The position numbers were made by a program, and so were the translations under genes. Positions 7,525-55,000 of a stretch of DNA of 64,000 nt are shown piece after piece (the stretch's first letter is position 1; the number at the start of each line of letters is the position of its first letter). Source of the stretch: Dimorphilus gyrociliatus (taxonomy: Eukaryota > Animalia > Annelida); the NCBI GenBank assembly GCA_904063045.1, contig CAJFCJ010000013.1, positions 294,623-358,622 on the forward strand, in the 5' to 3' direction. Below the pieces are notes generated by a model. It made no database searches, was not told where the DNA came from, and saw only the letters and a list, made by a program, of their open reading frames with translations.

Positions 7525-8905
7525 TCATTTTAAGGATGAAAATAGCACACTAATACTTTGGAGATAAGTATAGACATCAATTTTTTCTGCTTTTAAATCG
7601 AAATAATTTCCGTAGAGTAGGTTCATTGTTCCTATTGCTTGTCGTTTTTTCGTTTTCTTACATCTTAATCTATCGGTTGTAATATAGATAAATGTTTGAA
7701 GACCTAATAGCACCTCTGTTACGGTAAATATATCTGGATGGTTCATTGCAAATATTTCGGGATACGCTTGCCTAAAGTAGTCGACAGATGCGAAATTTCT
7801 TGGAGAAGATGGTTGTGGAATAGTTGCCCAATAGTATGGTGGAATTTCAGCAGTAGGTAAAATGTGGTTTCTAAGGATCAGTTCTGCAAATGTTATTAAA
7901 CGATCGTCGTTTGCAGGGCAATCTTTTACTATGGCCTCAAAAGCTTTGGAAACGTCATTGGGATCTAAGAATGCCAAACCGAAGAAACAAGTCAACCATT
8001 TTCCAGTCTTCGAAAATGGTTCGTTGTAATCTTCTAATAAATTGAGACTTCTCATTTTCCTGATAAAAATTTGGCTAAGATGAAAAGCACAACATTTGAT
8101 TTGAGCGTCCGGTATAAATTCATATAAAGCTTCAATCGCGTAAGCGTCATGATGGGAATAAAACTCTTTCGGTTGAAATTTACAATTCAGTTTGTTAGCT
8201 TCGTCGGTAATGAATTGGAAAATTTCCATATAATTCGCCTTTGTAGAAGTAGAAAATATGGCGTAAAGCAGAGGTACAATTACGTCATCCTTGAAACCAT
8301 AAATAAAATACATATGGCTATAATATTTAGGCGCAGTTCTATAGCTTATATCAGTAAATAATATTTCAACATCGTTGCACATAGCTTTAATGTTTGAGCT
8401 ACAGGTAAAGATAATTGTTCCTCTATTCTTTGCACCGAAATGAACGAATTTCTCTCCTCTTATTGTTCCTTGTGAATTTTTATCCAAATACACGTGCAAA
8501 TTACGTACATCGTCCGAGAATACTGTAGTAGCGTCCAAAGGCGTTTCCACAACTTGAAAAAGTTTTATTTTTTTTTTTTTTGTTTATTAATATCATTATT
8601 TAAACACTTAATAACCTATAAATACCTGTAACCGCATTTACGTCGACTTTCGCTTTCTTCGGATCTTGAATAAGTTCAATAATTTCGCTGTGTCTCTTAG
8701 AAGGTTGTACTGACTTTTTCCGATATTCAGCATTTTTTTCCATCATTTTTTCGTAGGTAAGACTATTGGCGATGGTTGTTATATTTTTTTGCTTAACTTG
8801 CCATTCGGCATCTTTAGAAGCCATTTTTCCGTAGTTTATCGCGTTATTTGGTACAACCGTTACATTATTTTGCATCGTTTGCATTTTAGTCCCTCTATCT
8901 GCCAT
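7525..8905 (-). CDS. MULE (Mutator-like) transposase-derived protein, two exons, catalytic triad degenerate
   Basis: Exons 8905-8626 and 8552-7525 are joined in frame by a 73-nt GT-AG intron. MULE-domain motifs: IIFTC..NI, LFTDISYRTAP, VPLLYAIF, CCAFHLSQ (CxxH), FFGLAFL, YW. No terminal inverted repeats seen by eye. Confidence 0.85.
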
Positions 8906-17297: not shown

Positions 17298-18760
17298 TAT
17301 TCTTTTTATTTTCCATTCACTCTTTGTACAATGCTTACTTAAAAAAGGAAGAAAATCCTTAAGAAAAAGTCATAGTGTACGCGCCACCTTCCGGTTTTTG
17401 ATTTAGAACTTGGCGGATAAAAGAGTTAATCAACGACCAAAGTTTATTCTAACTAACACGTACATAGAGAGAATGTTTGAAAAGAATACATAATATTATT
17501 TTGTCATAAATAGTCATTTATAGAACCGTAAATAGAACGCACACACACACATATATATTTATATTTATATATATATATATATGCATACATACATACATTG
17601 TATAATTAATGGGGAAAACTGGGGGAGAGAGAGAGAGATGGAGAGAAAGAAAGAGAAAGGGAGAGGGGAGAGGGAGAAAAAGAGAAAGAGAAAAAAAGAT
17701 AATTTAAATATAGTTGATGTAAGCATGAAAAAGACATTTTTTTTTCATTTCTTTTCGTTTTTTTCTGGCTAAAACTTTTACCAAAAAAAAACCTTTTTTT
17801 TTGCCAACAAAACGTTACGATAGAAAATATACACAACAATTAGAAACATCTATAGATATTTATATCCACAATCAAGGTCAGTTTTAGTTTGTTAAATTAA
17901 GCATCACTCCAAAAACACTGATAGGATTAAGATTATTATTTACTTGTTGTTCGTTATTAATTTACTTTATCTTTTCAGCCATAAACAAGAACAATACTCA
18001 ATTAACGGCGTTACCAATATATATATATATATATATACTTTTATGTAGAACATAATCAATCTATTGGCAGAAGTGATGCTTTCTTTATTTAAAAAACTAG
18101 AGACGACCTCGATAGAATACAGTACATTGGCAATTAAAAATCTATACACCTCAGTGCAGATATCCGTAGCCAATTTATGTTTTCTTTGTAATTTACTTAT
18201 CGCGTTACACTGTATAATTTGAGCCAAACTTATAACTTTTCATAATCAGTTATAATCTACCTAGATCAACCTGATTTCGTTTGGCTCAACAGTATTATCA
18301 TCAACGTAATCACCACCAACATCGTTATCGTTATCGACATCATAGACATAACCATAATCGCTATCAAAATCATCATCGTAGTCGTCATCGTCATCGTCAT
18401 CATCATAATCATCATAGTCATTGTAATATCTCCCTCTATCATCGAGTAACAGATAAATTTATCTGTTAAAAGTCACCAACTTCGTTTAAATCATTGTTAC
18501 ATTCTAATCGCCTCCGAAGGAGGGGAAGGGAAGATAAAATTCAAACGAATTTAAGGCGTACATCGACTCTTTTAACAAACAAACAATAACGTATAATCCA
18601 AGTAAATGTTTAAAAGATTAACAGCTATTGTTCTTGCTGTTTGTTCGAAAAGATTTCTCACAATTCGAGAAACAAAGCATCATTTACTCGATAGAGAAAA
18701 ATTTTGTAAAATTGATTATACAGTATAAGAAAGTGATACAATGCAAAAGTTAACTATAGC

Positions 18761-18930
18761 TAAATAGTTAGATAGATAGATTGATAAATAGATAAATACA
18801 TAAGACAGAGAATTAGATAAATAGATAGATAGATAGATATATGGATAGATAAATAGATGGCTTATATAACAATACATTAATACATAGATAAAATAGATAG
18901 ATAGATAAACAGTTAGATAAATGCAAAATG
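18761..18930 (+). repeat. Degenerate (GATA/ATAG)n tetranucleotide microsatellite
   Basis: Repeated tagatagata/gatagataaa units; explains the spurious ORFs at 18716-18998. Confidence 0.85.
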
Positions 18931-21045
18931 GATAAATAGGAAAAAATATTTTCTCGCTCTGTAACAAATAAGAGAAAAGAAAAACAATAAAAGTACATTT
19001 ATAAAGAGTTTACAATTCGATAAGAATGGTATGAATGGTCTTAATTTTTACAGCAGACAATTTCAAAACATTTCAATACAATAGATATAATAAATACGAA
19101 TAATAATCGGCTAATTACATTTGTACCAGCAAAATCGTGAACTCTCAATTACTTCTTTTTTTTTTTTTTTTTTAAATTTTACAAACTTTGACAAACAAAT
19201 CTAATACTACAAATAGGGTTAGTAGATAATATATATATATATATTTATGTATATATGCATATATACGTGTATAAGAATTCTGTACATTACAAATTATACC
19301 TGCGCTTATGTAACCAGTAAACCTTTTAACGTAAACATGTACTTTAAAACTTTTACAATGACAAACATACATTGGACAAACATTTTTTTATGCAATTCTT
19401 ATATAATTACTAAAAAGGACTAAATAAATTTTATATAAAGGTGTGTAGATAAGGAGACGACGAACGAGGGCGAAGAAGAGGACGAATGAAGAAGATGAAG
19501 AAGGTTAAGAAGATAAAAGAACGGAAAAATATATAATAGAAGTGAGAGCATATACGGTTTTAAATATATAAATATGCCTATTTACCTTAAATCCCTTTGC
19601 TAAGACAATCAAAAATATGTACAAAATTGGTTTTTTCCTGTTCGCTGTAAACATTTGCTTGTGTTATTTGTTGTTACTTCTTTATTTTCCATTTCCTGCT
19701 TGATCATTTTATGCTTAATCTGCTCTCCTGCAAATTTTCTGAGTGATAGTTTTAGAGAAAGTACTGCAAGATTGTAAGATTGTTGTAGGTCTTGCCGCGT
19801 CGCCCAGCAGCCCTAAGGCCAACTGGTATCGAGAGCTGAAAGAATCGAGTTTTTATTTGTTTCTCAACAAAGAGATTAACATATGAATTATGATTGGCTA
19901 AATAACCTCTAAAAATAGGCGTAGAACCGCCTTTATTTTTCCAAGCATCAAAGTTTTGCAAAATTTTCCGCTTTTCTCACTTTAATTAAGAAAGATGCGA
20001 TTTTCCGCTTTTTTCATTTAATCAAAAAATACCGTTATTCCCAAATTAGTAGACTTTTCGATCAACATTTTTAAAAATATAGCATTATTCAATATTTCAA
20101 ATTGATGGAAGAAAAAGGGGAAAAACCAATAGGACGGGAATAGCGATAGATTAGAGATGAAGAGGAAGTTAAGAGAATATATTAAGTGTACTATATATAT
20201 ATATATATATATTTATAGCCACTTTATATGTAACGTATGCTAATATTTTACTTGTGTTATATCTCTTCTTCTCCTCTCTCTCTCTCTCTCTCTCTCGATC
20301 TCTCCTCCTTCACTCTCCTCTTAATGTCTTCTATATCTGTTCAATTTAACACTAACAACAACTTCAAGACAAAACTTTTCTTTACGAGTTGGGTAACTTT
20401 TTTCAACGTTACCCAAGTCTAGTTTAAACACCTTTAAATTAGTTTTTTTAGTCTTTTTTTAGCCGTTAATGCCAAGCAATGACGCTTTGTTTTCTTCGTT
20501 TATCGCAAATCCTAACATCTTATCAGATCAGGACGAAAACTAAACTTTCTTTTTACAATAGAGTTTATAAAAAAAGAGTTTTGTTTGTCAAAGACCAAAA
20601 TAATCATTCCAGCTAACAAAAAGACCTTTAGAACCAATAAATCTTCTGTTTTTCTCCTTTTCTGCCTTTAAAAACAGTTATAAGCAAAAAAAAGTTTGCA
20701 TAAATTTTATTTTTTTTTTAAAAATAACCACCGTAAGCAGTCCTATAAATACCATCTTACTAAGATGTTTCTTTGAAGCTATAGGCTCAAAAATATGGAT
20801 ATTTTTGATAATAATAATAAAAAAGACTATATACGACATACAGCGTATACTTAACTAAGTAAATAAGCAGCATAAACTCTGTATTAGACGTGTTTTTGGT
20901 ACTATATCGTTGACATCTTTAAGATCGTAAAAGGTCATAGTGTTTTTGTGTTACTAAATTGAGTTGAGTGATCTTTTTATTAATTGTTTTTGTGTTTAGA
21001 TATTTAAAAATGATGGATTTATTTACAATATAAAGAGGATAGACA

Positions 21046-22220: not shown

Positions 22221-23544
22221 TAGTGTACATCAATTATTCCTAATGACTAAAGTTTTCTTTTCTAATAAAATACTACAGATAAAGGAATAATCTTTATCCA
22301 AATATCCTTAAATATATGAATATCCAAGGTAAATGTTTCAATTTTAATGATCATGAGATGCTCATTGACGAAACAAACTCTCAAAGCCACAATAATTAAA
22401 GTGAAGGGTAGAAAAAACTTAATACCTATTCTTTATCCTTAGCCTGTTCTATTTTTATAGATTATTAAAATTAATGTTAAGATAGCCTATCCTATTCTCT
22501 CTTTCTTTAAATATTCTTGTTATCCTCCGAAAAAATACACTCAATTTATATTAACTAGGTAAATTAGCTTTAGCTAATCTTTTTATATAAATGAAAAATC
22601 CCTTATTCATCTTTGGAAATCTTACCTTTGATAAGTGTTCTATATTCAGGTTAAACTTTTCTTTTCTCGTAAAAACATTATATATACTGTACTATGCACG
22701 TATACAGTATATACAATATAACCTTATACATGAATGCTTGTATACTATTTACAGTATACTGCGTATAGTGTAAGCATTAATATGCTTAAATCATCTAACG
22801 TAAGATGTTTCGTAAGAATGGAGTAACATTTAAGAAAATCAGGTCAGATGGATAGGATAAAAAATTTACTATTGTTCGAAAAAAAAAGCATTGAAGAGAG
22901 GGGAGATATATATGTATATTTTTAGTAGTTTATTTAAATATTAAAATAGAGAGAAAGTATCAAGAGAAAGATAGAGAGAAGAATAAATGGAGGAGGAAAC
23001 ATGCATAAATGTAGCTTTTTGTATTTTAGTCCTCTATATGTCCTTTCTCTTTTCTCCTTTCGTCTGTGTCTTGTTGTGTACTTCTTATCTCCTCCAGCCT
23101 CGCTCTCCTTCCCTTCTCTCTCTCTCTATCGCCAACTAAATCCGGAAAAGAGGTTATAGGAATAGGCGCGATTTGCAAAAACTTTGGTTCTAACGTTACA
23201 TCTTAGTTATTTTTTTAAACATGGTCTATTGTTTTTTTGAAGCGGATATAATCAGAGAAGAAGGTTAGACACTTTTTAAAAGAGGCTAATGTACCATTAT
23301 GTTATATATATACAACAATGCTGATAAGTTAAATATTTGAAATATCTGGTTAAGTCTGTTACATAATAGAAACATAGAAATGCAAAATGAGAGACAGAAA
23401 GTGAGAGATAGGCTGAGAGAGAGAGAGAGAGAGAGAAGGATAAAAGTTAAAAAAAGTCTTATCGAGATACGCTTATGAGCAACAAAAATTATTATCAAAT
23501 ATATTTAGAAATAAATTTGTTTATTATTCAAGACAATTGGAGAA

Positions 23545-23600
23545 GAGGAGGAAGAAGAAGAAGAAAAGAAGAAGAAGAAGAAGAAGAAGAAGAAGAAGAA
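23545..23600 (+). repeat. (GAA)n/(GAG)n trinucleotide microsatellite
   Basis: Seen directly. A similar run lies at about 51507-51556. Confidence 0.9.
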
Positions 23601-23698
23601 TAGACAGTAGGGAGAATATGAAGAAATGAAGGAGGATGAGGAAGAGGAAACAAAGAAGAATTCGAGAAAGAACTCTACAGTTTTAATTTTTCTCCTTC

Positions 23699-24744
23699 TC
23701 AAGAAGACTTCGGCGATGATCTCTTCCCTTCTTCTTTTTCGGTTTTAGTTTTTTCGGTGTTTCCTGTTGGTGTAGTTGTAGGTTTTTCATTAGTATTAAG
23801 TTTAATTTTTGCAGAATTGGCCAACATTGGAAATTCGACCTCTAAGGGTAACTGATCGTCCGAATTTTTTGCCCTCCTATTGTCGGAAGTTAGCCTAAGG
23901 TGATGCTCTTGACACACACGGGGGCATGCGAACGACGGATTTGTTGCGATTGTTGGCACTCTCGTTCCTTGAAAACCTCTTAAATCTGACGTTTCGAAGC
24001 GGCTAATATTTCCTTGTCCAGGGGAAATTATTCTTAAGCTTTCTGCACAGTTAACGCTCGGGAAGCTATGTCCATTAGAATATGGATTAAATCTTCCCTA
24101 ATTGGGTTAAATGGAAAATTTGATATATTATATTATTACTTAAAAAAATGTACGATTTAGCAATAATTAAAAACCTGTCGAGATCTTATAGAACTCAATC
24201 TGGTTGAATTCTCGGCCTTTCTCCTGGTTGAATCCTCTCTGTTCCTCTGAATTTCATATTCGAAATGCTTTGCATCTTGCAAGATTTCATTCAGACTCCT
24301 GGCACCTTTTGCTTCCGCTCTTAAGGAAATTGCTTGATTATTCAATCCAGTAATAAAACGATCTCGTGTCATCGCTTCCGGATCCGAGAATCCTGCACTT
24401 ATTGCAATATCATATAAAGCCTTACAAAAATCGTCTAGCGATTCTCCTTCCCTTTGAACCCTGGAGAAGAATCTCAATCGATTTTTAAACATTTTATTAC
24501 CGGTCTCAAAAAATTCGTCAAATTTCTTTATAATCTCTTCTATCGTCCTGTCCTCTCCGCCAATTGCCGAAATCAGACTTTCGGCCTCTTGACCCATAGA
24601 ATAGATCAATGTAGAAACTTGAACTTTGGAATTTTCTTCATTCAATTTAGACGCTATGGAGTAACGTAGAAAACGCTGCCTCCAAATTGGCCAGAGATGG
24701 GGAGAAGCAAAATTAAACGGTGGAGGAGGATCTAGTCGAGACAT
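23699..24744 (-). CDS. Spliced Ty3/gypsy Gag (capsid)-derived protein, about 322 aa; putative domesticated Gag
   Basis: Exon 1 (24744-24175, 190 codons) has PPPFNFASPHLWPIWRQRFLRYSIAS, QVSTLIYSMGQEAE, FFSRVQREGESLDDFCKALY and MTRDRFITGL, typical of gypsy Gag. A 77-nt GT-AG intron (24174-24098) joins it in phase 0 to open exon 2 (24097-23699). No pol ORF or LTR nearby. Confidence 0.85.
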
Positions 24745-25804
24745 CCTCTTTTTTTATTGTACTTTATTCTTGCCGTGCACCTTTACAGTTTCGAATATCG
24801 TTTATGATTAACTGCCTCTACATAATTTAGGCCCAAAGTGGAAAAGTGCAAATTCCTTTAATTAAAGACTGAGATATCTCATTACCATAAAAAAATGTAG
24901 AAAGATCTTTCTTGCACAAAAGAAAAAACACGAAAATTACAATAATCTCTAAACTTTTGCTTTTTTTCCGCTAAGACGTGTTGTCCCTGTTGTGCAGTTC
25001 GAATTTGTGATTGAAAAAAAATACTCCAAGCAAACTTTAAAAAAAAAACTGGCATTGTATTAAATTTAAGAAAAAAAGGTAAAATTCTCTTCAGCGATTA
25101 TCCGAGAGAAGATCCGTATGGTATAATTAGTAGATGTTGTCTAATACAAGTCATAAAGTGCACTCTTCCCCTCAATCGAATTAAGTTTTTCTCTTCTACC
25201 TTTAGTTCTCCCATTGTTTATGTAAAACGTTGAGACTTCTTTTTTATATTAATTATTCTTGTTTTATTTATTAAATCATTCTATCGTTACTCGCCTTTTG
25301 TCGTTCGTAGCATAGGTAGCGCTGCTAACCAGATAATGTGTAGTGCCAAAATTTATTCATATTTCATTTTTTATGTCTATATTAGAGATAGCTAGCAGAA
25401 AACTTAAATTTTATAAAAAGAAAACATACATCAAAGTGTCTATGTAGACATCATTTTCTTTTTAAAAGCATAAATGTCATCTTTTTTGTCAAAAAAACAA
25501 ACATCAATAGAAACAAATTAACAATTAAAATACGAATTATGGATGATCTTTAACGATAACAAGTATATAACAAACCTAATTTTCTTTATCAACCATTATA
25601 ATTAATTTGAGATTACCTTGTAAAAGTACCAGCTGATAATCGCATGATAAATGAGAAAGTACTTGAAAAGAGTTCATTACTCTCAAATTTGCGCTGCTCG
25701 CATATGTTAGATATACCCAAATTGAAACCTTGACATTTTTGTAGAAGATAACATACAGGTTTATGGTGCCTCTGTGAGCGAATTAATCAGTTGAACCAGT
25801 CAAA

Positions 25805-32409: not shown

Positions 32410-33351
32410 CTAACCACGGAAGTATATGTTTCGCCTAATATCCGAAGTCGTAGGCATGGGAGGATTGATACACCTTCGTCTAACGTAGACTTTTAGAGCT
32501 CCCATTATTGTTCTATTCTGCAAACCATAAACAATAGCATTTATAATAGGTGCAAAGTGCCAGAAAATCGTTACGATTGATAGTAAAACAGGCTCTTTAG
32601 CTCGACCAAGACGACAGGCTATGATGGGTCCATAGCAAATAATGCAAGCACCTAACCTGTACGCAACACTTGTCGTAACGCTTTTAATTTTAATAGCCGA
32701 AGCCGAAGTGCGAACAGCTAACGTTGCTATCTGTACCACTGCAACGATTCGACGTTGTTGGTTGTTAGTTACCTGAACGATATACATTAGACTGACGAAA
32801 GTTAGCAAAATGGGCAGGAGGCTAGAAACGAAAACTTGTAGAATGTGTCTCCAGTTGTCATTTGATGCAACACAAATTGAATTAAAAATTTCATAGTCAA
32901 TTCCAATGGAAATGATTCCACAGCATATAGATAGTATCCATATAAAGGAGAATTGCAGGAAAAAATTCCTTTTGGAAGAATTAGCTTGTCGGAAAGGCCG
33001 TGATAAAGATAAAAAATACTCAACAGCAAGAGAGCTTATAGTTGATAAGGCGGCACAGTCAATTGACGTTGTTATCAACACCATTCCATCACAACGTAAA
33101 TACTTCTTATTCAAATCACCTCCGAGAAGAATGAAAGCAATCTGTAAAGGCATTATCAGAGAGGAGGCAAGCAGATGAACCAGTGACAAGTGGCAAACAA
33201 GAATATGCTGTTGGGTGTGCAACTTCTTTGTTCCTATAATCGCAATAATAATTGGAACATTTAATACAATACCACCAAGCATACAAGCGACGGTCAGAGT
33301 TGCTCTAGCGGATTTCTCCACTACAGATACCGTCGACGTCGCGTTATCCAT
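32410..33351 (-). CDS. Intronless orphan rhodopsin-like (class A) GPCR, 313 aa
   Basis: Seven hydrophobic segments; TM1 Asn (VLNVP), TM3 Cys (LRCDG), LAVEYF at the DRY position, ECL2 Cys, CYGP at CWxP, NAIVY at NPxxY. Confidence 0.85.
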   Translation of the reverse strand: MDNATSTVSVVEKSARATLTVACMLGGIVLNVPIIIAIIGTKKLHTQQHILVCHLSLVHLLASSLIMPLQIAFILLGGDLNKKYLRCDGMVLITTSIDCAALSTISSLAVEYFLSLSRPFRQANSSKRNFFLQFSFIWILSICCGIISIGIDYEIFNSICVASNDNWRHILQVFVSSLLPILLTFVSLMYIVQVTNNQQRRIVAVVQIATLAVRTSASAIKIKSVTTSVAYRLGACIICYGPIIACRLGRAKEPVLLSIVTIFWHFAPIINAIVYGLQNRTIMGALKVYVRRRCINPPMPTTSDIRRNIYFRG

Positions 33352-52004: not shown

Positions 52005-55000
52005 TTACAAATGCAGTTCGAGGGCTTCGCAGAATAGTTTTGCAACACCTTCTTTACTTGATCGTATCGTCAGACGGTACATCTGTTTGTAACAAGAAAA
52101 ATATTATAGTATGCACATGTTTTCTTATAATAGATGTACAGTATACACATCAATGTATACATATTTCTTGTTGTACATTATTTGATCAAAAACAAGATAA
52201 GTAACTTGAGAGAAACTTCAACCAACCTGTTTACTCAATTCCAATCTCATTAAGACACCTATCTGTTGTTGTCGAGTAGCCACTATACCGGCTCCAACGC
52301 AATTACTTTCATTCGGATCGACGCCTTCCAAAAATGAAAAACCAAAACCCATCAGGCGAGCTTTTACATTTTCTTTCGCCACGGAAAACTTAGCTTTAAA
52401 GATACTCTGATTCTCCTGTTGAGGTTGGCCAAGTGCCTTCCATCTTTGGAAGAATGTCTTCGAATTCATCGCTACACCTTCAACAAATTTACTTAACATT
52501 ACTGGAACACGAATAGATAAACGCTGATCTGTTTCCCAAGTTCCTCCACCCTTATACTTATACGTAAGCAACAGTTGAGGATTGGCTTCAAAAACTGTTA
52601 TACATTCGGTATTTATCTGAAGTTGTTTCTGAGCTCCGCCAGGCAATTCCGATTCAATTGGCTTTACGTCGATCATTAATTGACTTGATAATTCAGACGC
52701 ATTTGTTATTTCTGTTGTCAAGTTAGTCATTGGATAGTTAGACTTGTTTCCCAAAAATAAACAAACTCTTCCCAAATTCTGACGAAATTCCGACCTAACG
52801 CCCACTTGTATCAGCTCATTTTCAAAGAGAACTCCATTATTTTTAGTATAAAAAGCATTGAAATTATCTTGCGATTCTTGAGAGTTGGAACTCGAACTTG
52901 TTAGGTTATTATGATTGTTAGTTTCTGTAAGCGAATCTCCTCCTAAGGCTAGGTCGACGAGCAGAGAATTTCCAGTAGATTGTGTCGGGAGTGGTTCGAC
53001 GGTTTTTATTTGGGGAATCGATGGATCAACTAAATCTGTGATTGCTTGAGATGCGGGTGTCTGCTTATATGTAACTGGTGCATCTTTAGTGGCTGGACGT
53101 TTCTTTTTCAATTTTGCCAATATTGAACTTTGACGTTCGGGGAATGGAGGCATTTCTTCTAGAACAGTGGCCAACACATCAGCAGATGCAATGGTAGACA
53201 ATTGAAGATATTCTATGGCGCGTTGCTGCAATTCGACATCCGCGTTACGGATTTGATTCTCATTGCTTAAAACTTCTTGTACGTGAACTTTAATTTCAGG
53301 AAAGAGGTTAACAAATTTGATATAGGCTGATAAAAGAAGCCCTCTGGTTTGAACATTGCATAAATGAAATTTCGAATGCAGCAATTTAAATTGTATAAGA
53401 GGGCTAGAGCGTGGATCTCCAGCAATAAGATTGCCAAACTCTCCAAGAATATAACCACCGACTTTGACCATATTTTCGTGGCATGCAGGCGCCTGTAGGG
53501 CTTCAAAAACAGTTTTGGCAGCATACCCTTGAACGTCGTCCCGATTAATAACAATATGTATGACTCTATACCACACTTCTTCGCTAACGTAGTCACCGGC
53601 TACTCTAATTAAATTCAGGATTGTGTCAACGTACCAAGTATAATCTACGGCGTACTTTTCGGCTAAAATGGCAACTTTAAGCACCATCTCTTCCCTGATA
53701 GAATAATCGGCCGTTTCCAAATACGTCAGCATCTCAGAAACAATATCAGAGGCATTACTTCGATCGCACATAGCGTACAATAAATCAACAGCTCTTTGTC
53801 TTACGCTTACATCTCTCTCAGTTTTTAGGGCCTGAATTACCGTCTCTTGGTGCTTCTTAACAGCGTCATGGGAAAATTCAGATGTTGCCAAAAGACACAT
53901 ACTTTCTAAAGCTAAATATCTCAGATTAGTTTCTCTGTGCTGAAGAAACTGTCCTAATTGATTACAAGCTCTAACAAGCAAAGTAGGATCGCAATCCATA
54001 TGGATGATAAGGTTAATAGCTTCAAATAAAACAGCATTCTTTGCGTTGGAATGTTGTACTTTCTTCGATTTTGGAGGCTCTTGCGCTTTGTTCAATATCG
54101 TCTCCAAGCATTCTGGTAGTCGAGTCTTCACTCCAGGATCATCAGATGGAGGATAATTTTGCAGAAGTCGTAATAACTTAACGGACAGCCATGGAGCGGG
54201 TACAAAGTAATAAGTATAGTCTTGTAAATCAGTATACGAAGACGTAACAATTCTAGACAATCTGGAAACAGCCAATGTTACGCATCCTTTGTACTCTTCT
54301 GGATTTCTCTTTACAAGCGTATCAATTAAGGAAACGGCAGCAGTCACCACCCCCAAATGTTGATCATTTAATAAATGAATTATTCTAGATGACCATTCTT
54401 GCATTTTAATAACTTCAGGTGCATTACGAATTAATCTCAGCAGGCATAAAGCCGATGATTGCTTAACGGAATCAATTGTTTCTCCCGAAACTAGTAGTTT
54501 TGGGATAACTTGACCGAGTTCTTCGGCCATTTCGGCACTTCCAATGTTGGCAATACATTGTAAAGCCAAATTAACGTGAATTGGGTTACGAGAAGACAGG
54601 TCATTCTTTATTGATTGTATAACCAATTTCATAAGTTCGTTACTCTCACTTACTAAAACTGATATGAATAAATATCCTATTTGCTTCTCAGTATACTTGT
54701 TCGAGCTAAGTAGATTCACCGCCTCCATATGTCCAAAGTCAATATCGTGACCCAAAAGAAATATAAATAACAGCTTACATACATATTTCTTCTTTTGATA
54801 GCCATCCAAAGTTTTATCTCCTATAATAAAAAAAAAAAAATTACAATTGTAAACATCGCAGATGAGTGAAAGTCGACTATCAAAACACAATACTTAAAAA
54901 TATCATTTAAATAAAAAACATTAAAAATAAATAGAGAATTTAATATAAAATTCTTTTCTTTACCCTTGAACTTGGATCTGATATTAGCTAATTCCTTGTT

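What the first reader, a model, noticed from the sequence alone, without database searches (positions are those of the whole stretch)
23699..24744. Spliced, stand-alone Ty3/gypsy Gag capsid gene: candidate new Arc-like domestication
Seen: an intact 190-codon Gag capsid exon (PPPFNF..WPIWRQRF, TLIYSMGQEAE, SRVQREGESLDDF, RDRFITGL), a canonical 77-nt intron of host-typical size, and a 133-codon second exon giving an unrelated C-terminal tail. That tail has at most a remnant Cys/His cluster (CPRVCQEHH) instead of a CCHC knuckle and ends in a Thr/Lys/Glu-rich, likely disordered stretch. No protease, RT or integrase ORF follows in the next 6 kb, and I saw no LTR or primer-binding site. Established: Arc (separately in tetrapods and flies), PEG10, RTL and PNMA genes are co-opted gypsy Gags, several forming capsids that carry RNA between cells. 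Inference: an independent capsid domestication in this lineage, possibly an intercellular RNA-transfer system.
Basis: partly seen in the sequence, partly recalled or inferred. Interest (0 to 1): 0.9.

Follow-up and report, generated by a model that had tools for sequence, protein, structure and literature searches.

The report
Domesticated retrotransposon capsid gene in annelid
A tiny marine worm (Dimorphilus gyrociliatus) carries an unannotated two-exon host gene made from the capsid (Gag) gene of a Ty3/gypsy retrotransposon, kept almost unchanged in a distant relative; this is a new, independent case of the kind of co-option that produced Arc and PEG10, and what it does is unknown.

Summary
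On the minus strand there is a 190-codon exon (24744..24175), a GT..AG intron of 77 nt (24174..24098) and a 132-codon exon plus stop (24097..23699).

- **Origin:** exon 1 is a complete Ty3/gypsy Gag capsid domain. It is 30-39% identical to the N-termini of intact gag-PR-RT-RH-INT polyproteins. A family profile hits Drosophila Arc1, and a confident AlphaFold model (pLDDT 89.6) matches Arc, PNMA2, PEG10 and HIV capsids.
- **Species:** the window is D. gyrociliatus (GCA_904063045.1). The public annotation calls no gene here.
- **Ortholog:** an unidentified relative has the gene in the same collinear block, between FAR and a Rabaptin/FYVE gene.
- **Selection:** synonymous sites are saturated, yet exon 1 is 92% identical in protein (dN/dS 0.02-0.06), better kept than three neighbouring host genes. 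Exon 2 is also under constraint (dN/dS 0.13-0.24, indels of 3 and 6 nt). It has no conserved start codon, and its frame is closed by stops up to the acceptor AG, so splicing is well supported without RNA data.
- **No element around it:** no pol, LTR or second copy lies in the 64 kb.
- **Tail:** no homologues, no intact zinc knuckle, predicted disordered.

Verdict: a real, independent Gag domestication. Capsid assembly and RNA transfer remain untested.

The parts
24175..24744 (-). Exon 1: 190 codons from the ancestral gag start codon. It holds the complete two-lobed Ty3/gypsy capsid (CA) domain (helices at residues 15-31, 39-50, 52-61, 68-94 | 103-117, 122-132, 137-145) plus a long C-terminal helix (151-189).
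   Evidence: The ORF is. phmmer gives 3505 hits, with the N-termini of PR-RT-RH-INT polyproteins at E 1e-20 to 1e-39. 24 of 48 family members hit Pfam Retrotrans_gag. The family profile hits dArc1 6TAP at E 9.6e-5. The AF2 model has pLDDT 89.6, and its Foldseek top hits are Arc, PNMA2, HIV CA, PEG10 and MOAP1. dN/dS is 0.02-0.06.
24098..24174 (-). Intron: 77 nt, GT..AG, phase 0 (74 nt in the ortholog).
   Evidence: The donor CAG|GTTTTT and the acceptor AG are conserved in L001. Identity falls to 21/40 in the middle, with indels of 1 and 2 nt. There is a stop in the exon-1 frame after 5 codons, and 4 stops in the exon-2 frame, the last overlapping the AG. No RNA evidence was available.
23699..24097 (-). 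Exon 2: 132 codons plus a TGA stop. This is a lineage-specific, basic (pI 9.4), probably disordered tail. It has conserved motifs (NGHSFPxVNCAESLRIISPGQGNIxRF; CxRVCQxxH; QLPLEVEFPMLANxxKIKLNTNEK; KRSSPKS) and no CCHC knuckle.
   Evidence: Translation is. It is 72% identical to the ortholog, with indels of 3 and 6 nt only and the stop at the same place, and dN/dS is 0.13-0.24. The best-kept first 45 codons have no in-frame ATG in either species. It has no homologue other than the ortholog and no Pfam match. AF2 pLDDT is 40.9.
24756..24915 (-). Conserved non-coding block directly upstream of the start codon, taken to be the promoter or 5' UTR of the gene.
   Evidence: It is 144/160 identical and gapless against L001, while the flanking non-coding DNA is 50-65% identical and synonymous sites are saturated. 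Stops are present in all frames (read). There is no unusual RNA folding (z +0.27 and -0.11). The function is inferred, not shown.

Best explanation
This is a host gene of the annelid Dimorphilus gyrociliatus that was exapted from the gag gene of a Ty3/gypsy LTR retrotransposon.

Shown:
- The gene keeps the ancestral start codon and the whole two-lobed capsid (CA) domain, including every residue that is invariant or nearly invariant in the transposon family.
- It has lost the zinc knuckles, protease, RT, RNase H, integrase and LTRs.
- It has a short intron just after the CA domain, which joins CA to a 132-residue, basic, probably disordered tail with no detectable relatives.
- It sits at the same place in a collinear gene block in a second, strongly diverged species.
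- It evolves under purifying selection that is stronger on CA than on three neighbouring host genes.

Inferred:
- The 322-aa, 36.6-kDa product acts through what CA domains do, which is self-association into dimers, oligomers or capsid-like shells. The conserved short motifs of the tail would supply partners, localisation or weak nucleic-acid binding.
- The strong, even constraint points to a cellular role of the Arc/PNMA/PEG10 type rather than an arms-race role.

Whether shells form, whether they carry RNA, and in which cells the gene is expressed are all unknown.
For: - Gag origin: phmmer against 1.8 billion representatives gives 3505 hits. In P0042 and P0103, residues 1-175 align with the query and are followed by aspartic protease, RVT_1, RT_RNaseH, Integrase_H2C2 and rve. 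24 of 48 aligned relatives hit PF03732 Retrotrans_gag.
- Capsid fold: the family profile hits Drosophila Arc1 capsid (6TAP) over both lobes at E 9.6e-5. The AF2 model has pLDDT 89.6 and eight helices. Foldseek top hits are all retroviral-type capsids: Arc CTD, PNMA2, HIV-1 CA, MOAP1, PEG10 and dArc1, with probability 0.9-1.0. The viral library returns Gag and metavirus ORF1.
- Family residues: all invariant and near-invariant family columns are kept in the window protein.
- Orthology: P0001 is 92% identical and lies on contigs with FAR upstream in divergent orientation and Rabaptin/FYVE downstream. There are 17 collinear blastn blocks between window 15.6-34.2 kb and L001.
- Selection: exon 1 has dN 0.03-0.045, dS 0.8-1.75 and omega 0.02-0.06. 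Exon 2 has omega 0.13-0.24. The neighbours FYVE, GPCR and LMF1 are only 78-85% identical in protein, with dN 0.09-0.13.
- Splicing: both splice sites are conserved. Exon 2's frame is closed by stops until the AG in both species. Its most conserved part has no start codon.
- No mobile-element context: there is no pol or second gag copy in the 64 kb or in any of the ortholog loci fetched up to that call, L001-L004, and no LTR-like direct repeats.
- Tree: the two orthologs sit on a long stem (1.5 substitutions/site) with short tips (0.08), nested among transposon Gags.
- Species: contig CAJFCJ010000013.1 of GCA_904063045.1 is D. gyrociliatus (PMC10735302).
Against: - There is no RNA evidence for transcription or for the junction.
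- The published annotation, which used transcriptome evidence (PMC7854359), has no gene model between FAR and the end of the fetched locus. The window's ORF is not in the protein collection.
- The donor GTTTTT departs from the usual GTAAGT-type consensus (consensus from my own knowledge).
- Only two species are available, so selection is an average over both lineages, and the age of the gene is bounded only by their split.
- Genome-wide copy number in D. gyrociliatus was not measured. Its most abundant transposon is a Ty3/gypsy family, Dingle, whose Gag I could not compare.
- Foldseek E-values are marginal (about 1e-2) and TM-scores are 0.5-0.6.
- Nothing here tests assembly or RNA binding, and the nucleocapsid knuckles that bind RNA in the ancestors are gone.
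Confidence: 0.75

Rival explanations
1. It is a Gag-derived restriction factor. A capsid-only protein would co-assemble with, or bind, capsids of related Ty3/gypsy elements such as the resident Dingle family and block their replication, in the manner of Fv1, enJS56A1 or Ty1 p22.
For: It is a stand-alone CA with the assembly domain intact and the enzymatic parts lost. The host genome is compact with only 4.87% transposons, and its most abundant family is a Ty3/gypsy element (PMC7854359). The long stem branch could reflect an early adaptive phase.
Against: dN/dS of 0.02-0.06 on CA is lower than in neighbouring housekeeping-type genes. Restriction factors in arms races usually show fast or positively selected evolution (from my own knowledge of Fv1 and TRIM5). 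The closest transposon Gags found are only 30-39% identical, which is too far for simple co-assembly unless an unsampled relative lives in this genome.
Confidence: 0.12
2. It is a decaying, truncated retrotransposon insertion (a solo gag) whose ORF is still open by chance, and the 'intron' and 'exon 2' are fortuitous.
For: The gene is absent from the published annotation. The donor is non-consensus. The tail has no homologues and is predicted disordered.
Against: The locus is orthologous in two species whose synonymous sites are saturated. Even so, both keep 190 + 129-132 open codons. 77 of 99 exon-1 differences are at third positions (p 5e-20). Exon-2 indels are 3 and 6 nt and the stop is kept. 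No LTR or pol remnant is present.
Confidence: 0.03
3. Only the 195-aa capsid protein is made, either unspliced or by intron retention. Exon 2 would then be conserved for another reason, for example as part of a different transcript or as a 3' UTR element.
For: There are no RNA data. The donor is weak-looking. The CA-only ORF ends 5 codons into the intron. Exon 2 is much less constrained than exon 1.
Against: Exon 2 shows codon-position periodicity in exactly the frame produced by the splice (25/16/48, p 1e-4) and has 3n indels. Its best-conserved 45 codons have no upstream ATG, and the frame opens at the AG. The read-through extension is not conserved: 5 aa in the window against 45 aa in L001. 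A CA-only isoform through intron retention remains possible alongside the spliced form.
Confidence: 0.1

Closest known systems
Drosophila Arc1/Arc2 and tetrapod Arc (Ty3/gypsy Gag-derived, capsid-forming, mRNA-carrying)
   Same: It is a stand-alone host gene made from a Ty3/gypsy Gag, with a two-lobed CA domain. The family profile aligns with dArc1 across both lobes (E 9.6e-5). Arc CTD is the best structural match. It has no pol and no LTR, is syntenic between species and is under purifying selection.
   Different: It is not an ortholog of either Arc. The Foldseek alignments to Arc structures show about 15% identity, against 30-39% to active-type gag-pol elements, so the capture was separate and happened in a dinophilid annelid lineage. 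It has an intron after CA and a novel 132-aa tail. It lacks the N-terminal coiled-coil/matrix-like domain of tetrapod Arc and the zinc knuckle of dArc1 (both from my own knowledge of those proteins). Capsid formation and RNA transfer have not been tested.
PNMA family and MOAP1 (mammalian Gag-derived genes; PNMA2 forms non-enveloped capsids without RNA)
   Same: A CA domain is followed by a divergent C-terminal extension, with no NC knuckle in many members. PNMA2 capsid and MOAP1 CTD are among the top fold matches. The only Pfam hint for the window protein is PNMA (E 0.086).
   Different: The Pfam score (12.7 bits) is far below the family cut-off (25), so it is not a member. It comes from a different host phylum and a different source element.
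PEG10 / RTL (SIRH) genes (sushi-ichi-type Ty3/gypsy domestications in mammals)
   Same: It is a Gag-derived host gene under purifying selection. PEG10 CA-CTD is among the fold matches (TM 0.68-0.72 normalised to the target).
   Different: PEG10 keeps the CCHC knuckle, the protease and a -1 frameshift (from my own knowledge). Here the second part is reached by splicing, frameshifting is excluded by stops in the target frame, and no protease remains.
Gag of intact Ty3/gypsy elements of the type represented by P0042 and P0103 (gag-PR-RT-RH-INT in one ORF)
   Same: It has the same N-terminus (M..PP.PF.F..P..WP.W..RF), the same CA length, and all family-invariant residues.
   Different: Those elements carry two CX2CX4HX4C knuckles and a DTGAD protease after CA. 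The window gene has neither, and its post-CA sequence is not detectably related to theirs.
Drosophila Gagr (domesticated gag of gypsy-group errantiviruses)
   Same: It is an invertebrate, single-copy gag-only host gene conserved across species (PMC10816282, title and abstract seen).
   Different: The source lineage and the host are different. No sequence comparison was made here.

Membership tests
Ty3/gypsy (Metaviridae) Gag capsid domain | Significant sequence homology to the Gag region of elements with the order PR-RT-RNaseH-INT | tested here: met
   E values run from 1e-20 to 1e-39 against the N-termini of polyproteins. P0042 and P0103 carry Asp protease, RVT_1, RT_RNaseH(_2), Integrase_H2C2 and rve in that order.
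Ty3/gypsy (Metaviridae) Gag capsid domain | Match to a curated Gag family model (PF03732 Retrotrans_gag or PF19259 Ty3_capsid) | tested here: inconclusive
   The window protein itself has no Pfam hit at E<=0.01. However, 24 of 48 aligned relatives hit PF03732 and one hits Ty3_capsid, so membership is transitive rather than direct.
Ty3/gypsy (Metaviridae) Gag capsid domain | Two-lobed all-helical CA fold (NTD + CTD) | tested here: met
   The AF2 model has pLDDT 89.6, with 4 + 4 helices. Foldseek top hits are Arc, PNMA2, HIV-1 CA, PEG10, MOAP1 and dArc1. The family profile hits dArc1 at E 9.6e-5. Foldseek E-values are only about 1e-2.
Ty3/gypsy (Metaviridae) Gag capsid domain | CCHC zinc knuckle (nucleocapsid) after CA | tested here: not met
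   Relatives carry two CX2CX4HX4C knuckles. The tail has only CxRVCQxxH with no fourth ligand. A profile of the relatives' post-CA region scores no better than shuffled tails, with 810/2000 and 1913/2000 shuffles at or above the observed score.
Domesticated (exapted) transposon gene | Loss of the parts needed for mobility (LTRs, pol) | tested here: met
   tblastn with five gag-pol relatives finds only CA in the 64 kb and in the ortholog loci fetched up to that call, L001-L004. There are no LTR-like direct repeats within +/-10 kb.
Domesticated (exapted) transposon gene | Orthologous, syntenic presence in more than one species | tested here: met
   It holds the same position between FAR and Rabaptin/FYVE in a collinear block of about 18.6 kb of the window and about 20 kb of L001. 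Neighbouring proteins are 78-85% identical and dS is saturated, so the second genome is a distinct species. Only two species were available.
Domesticated (exapted) transposon gene | Purifying selection on the coding sequence at the orthologous locus | tested here: met
   dN/dS is 0.02-0.06 for exon 1 and 0.13-0.24 for exon 2. Third-position excess has p 5e-20 and 1e-4.
Domesticated (exapted) transposon gene | Single or low copy in the genome | tested here: inconclusive
   There is one copy in the 64-kb window. In the sister species there is one locus per sample, and no paralogue appears between 40% and 90% identity in the protein collections. The whole D. gyrociliatus assembly could not be scanned.
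Domesticated (exapted) transposon gene | Transcription, splicing and a host function | not testable with these tools
   No RNA-seq was accessible, and the public annotation has no model here.
Arc (tetrapod Arc or Drosophila Arc1/2) as a gene family | Orthology or closest sequence relationship to Arc genes | tested here: not met
   The closest relatives are transposon Gags at 30-39% identity. Arc is reached only by a profile at E 1e-4, and the Foldseek alignments to Arc show about 15% identity. It is Arc-like in kind but not an Arc.
Arc-like function (capsids that carry RNA between cells) | Self-assembly into capsids, RNA encapsidation and release in vesicles | not testable with these tools
   The only evidence is that the CA fold and the family-invariant residues are kept.

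The most novel reading that the evidence does not exclude
The protein still assembles into capsid-like particles and is used by this miniature annelid to move RNA or protein between cells. That would be a third, independent, spiralian invention of Arc-type signalling. The nucleotide-level constraint inside its own coding sequence (codons 76-129) and in its 5' leader would then mark the RNA it recognises.
Probability: 0.1. Interest if true: 0.85.

Novelty: new member of a known kind. Interest (0 to 1): 0.55.

Why it matters
Co-opted Gag genes (Arc, PEG10, RTL, PNMA, Gagr) are known almost only from mammals and flies. It is an open question whether capture of a capsid is a general and repeatable route to new animal genes.

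Here is a clean case in a spiralian. The source is the gag of a widespread Ty3/gypsy lineage. The gene is stripped to CA, has gained an intron and a new tail, and is held under tighter constraint than its neighbours in one of the smallest and most transposon-poor annelid genomes.

D. gyrociliatus is a laboratory-cultured species with a published genome, transcriptome and ATAC-seq data (PMC7854359), so expression and assembly can be tested directly. The case also shows that a reference annotation can miss such a gene entirely.

Tried and rejected
1. **Tail as a degenerate relic of nucleocapsid plus the start of protease.** By eye, 'CPRVCQEHH' resembles 'CPRCGGIAH', and 'PLEVEFPMLANSAKIKLNTNEK' resembles 'PWTVTLDIAQVPLAFKIDTGAD'. 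I built HMMs of the relatives' post-CA region and of the protease active-site region from 46 relatives. The tails of both species scored no better than their shuffles, with 575-1913 of 2000 shuffles at or above the observed score. phmmer of the tail against all 152 retrieved proteins found nothing either (best E 0.19). Rejected as unsupported, though not disproved.
2. **Programmed frameshift instead of splicing.** Excluded. The exon-2 frame has 4 stops (window) and 2 stops (L001) inside the intron, the last one 0-3 codons before the AG.
3. **Structured RNA as the cause of the conserved 5' block and the synonymous-site suppression.** MFE z-scores are -0.4, -0.5, +0.3 and -0.1, so there is no signal. 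Rfam has no hit in the window.
4. **Search for the tail's origin in 5.8 billion protein clusters.** Only the ortholog's 83-aa ORF was found.
5. **Looking for a spliced transcript or the window's own ORF in public assemblies.** The 195-aa ORF is not on record. All Logan contigs carrying the ortholog are unspliced genomic DNA from one species.
6. **Identifying the second species.** A literature search for the SRR series found nothing relevant.
7. **Literature on Gag domestication in annelids.** Nothing found.
8. **A malformed paper query** was repeated in corrected form.
Full report
**1. What is there**

On the minus strand, an ATG at 24744 opens a 195-codon ORF that ends at 24157. A GT at 24174-24173 follows codon 190 (CAG|GTTTTT). 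An AG at 24099-24098 precedes a second open frame that runs from 24097 to a TGA at 23701-23699. The interval is 77 nt and phase 0.

The spliced product would be 322 aa, 36.6 kDa, with pI 9.2.

**2. Where the window comes from**

A single-exon GPCR in the window (32410..33351) is an exact match to a protein on contig CAJFCJ010000013.1 of assembly GCA_904063045.1. That accession is the published genome of the annelid Dimorphilus gyrociliatus (PMC10735302; genome paper PMC7854359).

The genome paper reports a 73.8-Mb genome with a median intron of 66 bp and 4.87% transposable elements. Its most abundant family is a Ty3/gypsy element with an env gene, named 'Dingle'. The 77-nt intron is thus of host-typical size.

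The neighbours are ordinary host genes:
- coronin
- a Rabaptin/FYVE protein
- fatty-acyl-CoA reductase (FAR)
- LMF1
- a GPCR
- a beta-1,4-galactosyltransferase
- AP-2 alpha
- an ASC channel
- an isochorismatase-domain protein

**3. Exon 1 is a Ty3/gypsy capsid**

Pfam alone does not call it (PNMA, E 0.086). An exhaustive phmmer search of 1.8 billion representatives gives 3505 hits at E<=1e-3 and 794 at E<=1e-10.

In the long hits the homologous stretch is the N-terminus. In P0042 (1294 aa) and P0103 (1309 aa), residues 1-175 align with the query. They are followed by aspartic protease, RVT_1, RT_RNaseH, Integrase_H2C2 and rve, which is the Ty3/gypsy order. Half of 48 aligned relatives hit PF03732 Retrotrans_gag, and one hits Ty3_capsid.

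A profile of the family finds the Drosophila Arc1 capsid structure (6TAP) across both lobes at E 9.6e-5. An AlphaFold2 model built on the 48-sequence alignment is confident (pLDDT 89.6) and shows 4 + 4 helices.

The best Foldseek matches in the PDB are all retroviral-type capsids: human and rat Arc CTD, PNMA2 capsid, HIV-1 CA, MOAP1, PEG10 and dArc1. Their probabilities are 0.9-1.0, although E-values are only about 1e-2 and TM-scores 0.5-0.6. The viral library returns retroviral Gag, a fungal metavirus ORF1 and caulimovirus coat proteins.

The window protein keeps every invariant and near-invariant column of the family: P7, F10, F12, P15, W18, W21, R24, F25, G51, F79, E101, L110, R127, D128, G133 and others.

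**4. It is not part of a mobile element**

tblastn with five full-length gag-pol relatives and two Gag-only proteins (P0007 and the ortholog P0001) finds only this CA exon in the 64 kb. The next best hit has E 0.3. Direct repeats within 10 kb on either side are all microsatellites. Relatives carry two CX2CX4HX4C knuckles and a DTGAD protease after CA, and the window gene has neither.

**5. It is orthologous and constrained in a second species**

The only close relative in the protein collections is P0001, at 92% identity. It lies on Logan assemblies of SRR23372215/216/228/229/231/232 and SRR31984834. All of these are at least 99.96% identical to each other, so they represent one species or strain.

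The 38-kb contig is collinear with window 15.6-34.2 kb in 17 blocks. FAR lies upstream in divergent orientation and the Rabaptin/FYVE gene lies downstream.

The species is clearly different. The neighbouring FYVE, GPCR and LMF1 proteins are 78-85% identical, and dS is 1 to above 3, which is saturated.

Against that background, exon 1 has 99 nucleotide differences, of which 77 are at third codon positions (chi-square p 5e-20). Only 16 are amino-acid changes. dN is 0.03-0.045 and dN/dS is 0.02-0.06 by four methods. This dN is lower than in the three host neighbours (0.09-0.13).

A fixed transposon copy at an orthologous site should drift neutrally. This degree of constraint means the host uses the protein.

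**6. The intron and exon 2**

There is no RNA evidence, but the comparative evidence is coherent:
- **Splice sites.** The donor CAG|GTTTTT and the acceptor AG are conserved. The interior of the interval is the least conserved part of the locus (21/40) and carries indels of 1 and 2 nt, giving 74 nt in the ortholog.
- **Coding signature.** Exon 2 differs at codon positions 1/2/3 by 25/16/48 (p 1e-4). Its indels are 3 and 6 nt only, its stop is at the same place, and dN/dS is 0.13-0.24.
- **Frame closure.** The exon-2 frame is closed by stops throughout the interval in both species. In the window the last stop is the TAG that contains the acceptor AG.
- **No own start codon.** The best-kept part of exon 2 is its first 45 codons (NPYxNGHSFPxVNCAESLRIISPGQGNIxRF), and neither species has an in-frame ATG there.
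- **Read-through not conserved.** Reading through from exon 1 gives 5 aa in the window and 45 aa in the ortholog.

Splicing of exon 1 to exon 2 is the only simple way to translate exon 2. A frameshift is excluded. An additional CA-only isoform by intron retention cannot be excluded.

**7. The tail**

The tail has no Pfam match. It has no homologue in 5.8 billion clusters other than the ortholog's ORF, and no similarity to any of the 152 retrieved Gag or polyprotein sequences. AlphaFold gives pLDDT 41 on a two-sequence alignment, which is weak evidence for disorder. The tail is basic, with pI 9.4.

Between the two species it keeps several short motifs and a C..C...H cluster (CxRVCQxxH), but there is no fourth ligand, so it is not a CCHC knuckle.

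I suspected it was the eroded remnant of nucleocapsid plus the protease active-site strand. Profiles of those regions score the real tails no better than shuffled ones, so the origin of exon 2 is open.

**8. Place in the family**

In a maximum-likelihood tree of 146 CA domains, the two orthologs are joined with support 1.0 on a stem of 1.5 substitutions/site and are separated from each other by 0.08. They are nested among transposon Gags without a supported sister.

This pattern has two readings. Either the source element is unsampled, or there was a burst of change after capture followed by stasis. No ortholog-level hit (above 40% identity) exists in any other genome in the collections. The gene is therefore known only from these two related species.

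**9. Mechanism**

Shown: the gene is an exapted Gag with an intact CA, under strong constraint.

Inferred: it acts through CA self-association, in dimers, oligomers or shells, as in Arc, PNMA2 and PEG10. The tail would provide short linear motifs and positive charge. I put about 0.45 on particle formation in vitro and about 0.1 on Arc-type intercellular RNA transfer.

A restriction-factor role against resident Ty3/gypsy elements is the main functional rival (0.12). It is disfavoured by the very low dN/dS and by the distance to the sampled transposon Gags.

**10. Annotation status and novelty**

The public annotation has no gene between FAR and the end of the fetched locus (L006 positions 17548-20942, which is window 25804-22410). 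The ORF is also absent from the protein collection.

Literature searches found no report of a Gag domestication in annelids. The genome paper does not mention one, with zero occurrences of 'domesticat'.

I rate it a new member of a known kind. It is the same kind of event as Arc, PNMA, PEG10 and Gagr, but independent in origin and in a phylum where none was described in the library searched.

**11. Limits**

- Only two species are available.
- There are no RNA data.
- No genome-wide copy count was possible.
- Dingle Gag was not compared.
- The second species is unidentified.
- Foldseek statistics are marginal.

Noticed in passing
window 24359-24518 (-), codons 76-129 of exon 1: Synonymous change is suppressed here. 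Only 10 of 51 conserved-residue degenerate codons differ from the ortholog, against 62 of 117 in the rest of exon 1 (Fisher p 8e-5; the region was chosen after seeing the data). Nucleotide identity is 93% although dS is saturated elsewhere. No unusual RNA folding was found (z about -0.4). The cause is unknown.
   Followed up: partly
window 24756-24915 (-): A gapless 160-nt block just upstream of the start codon is 90% identical between the two species, while the surrounding non-coding DNA is 50-65% identical. It has stops in all frames, contains a donor-like ATG|GTAATG, and gives no RNA-fold signal. It is probably a promoter or 5' UTR, possibly with a leader intron.
   Followed up: partly
window 22410-25804, corresponding to L006 17548-20942: The public annotation of GCA_904063045.1 calls no gene in this interval, so the Gag-derived gene is missing from the reference gene set.
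   Followed up: yes
window 7525-8550 (-): This 341-aa ORF has a weak MULE transposase domain (E 1.2e-5, 26.1 bits, just under the Pfam cut-off of 27.6). The genome paper lists MULE among the DNA transposons of this species. Whether it is a mobile copy or another co-opted gene was not examined.
   Followed up: no
window 23420-23445 and 23545-23640: (CT)n and (CTT)n microsatellites lie directly downstream of the stop codon. The ortholog lacks about 66 nt just upstream of the (CTT)n tract (window about 23619-23684), so the 3' flank varies in length.
   Followed up: no
window 52218-54890 (-): AP-2 alpha adaptin is encoded almost entirely (890 aa) in one uninterrupted ORF. This illustrates the intron loss described for this compact genome.
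   Followed up: no
L007 (JGI sample 3300017525, 4104 nt): The closest clean full-length relative, P0042, lies on a 4.1-kb contig of JGI sample 3300017525 as a single gag-pol ORF. If that sample is a metatranscriptome, which I have not checked, elements of this Gag type are transcribed somewhere. The host organism is unknown.
   Followed up: no
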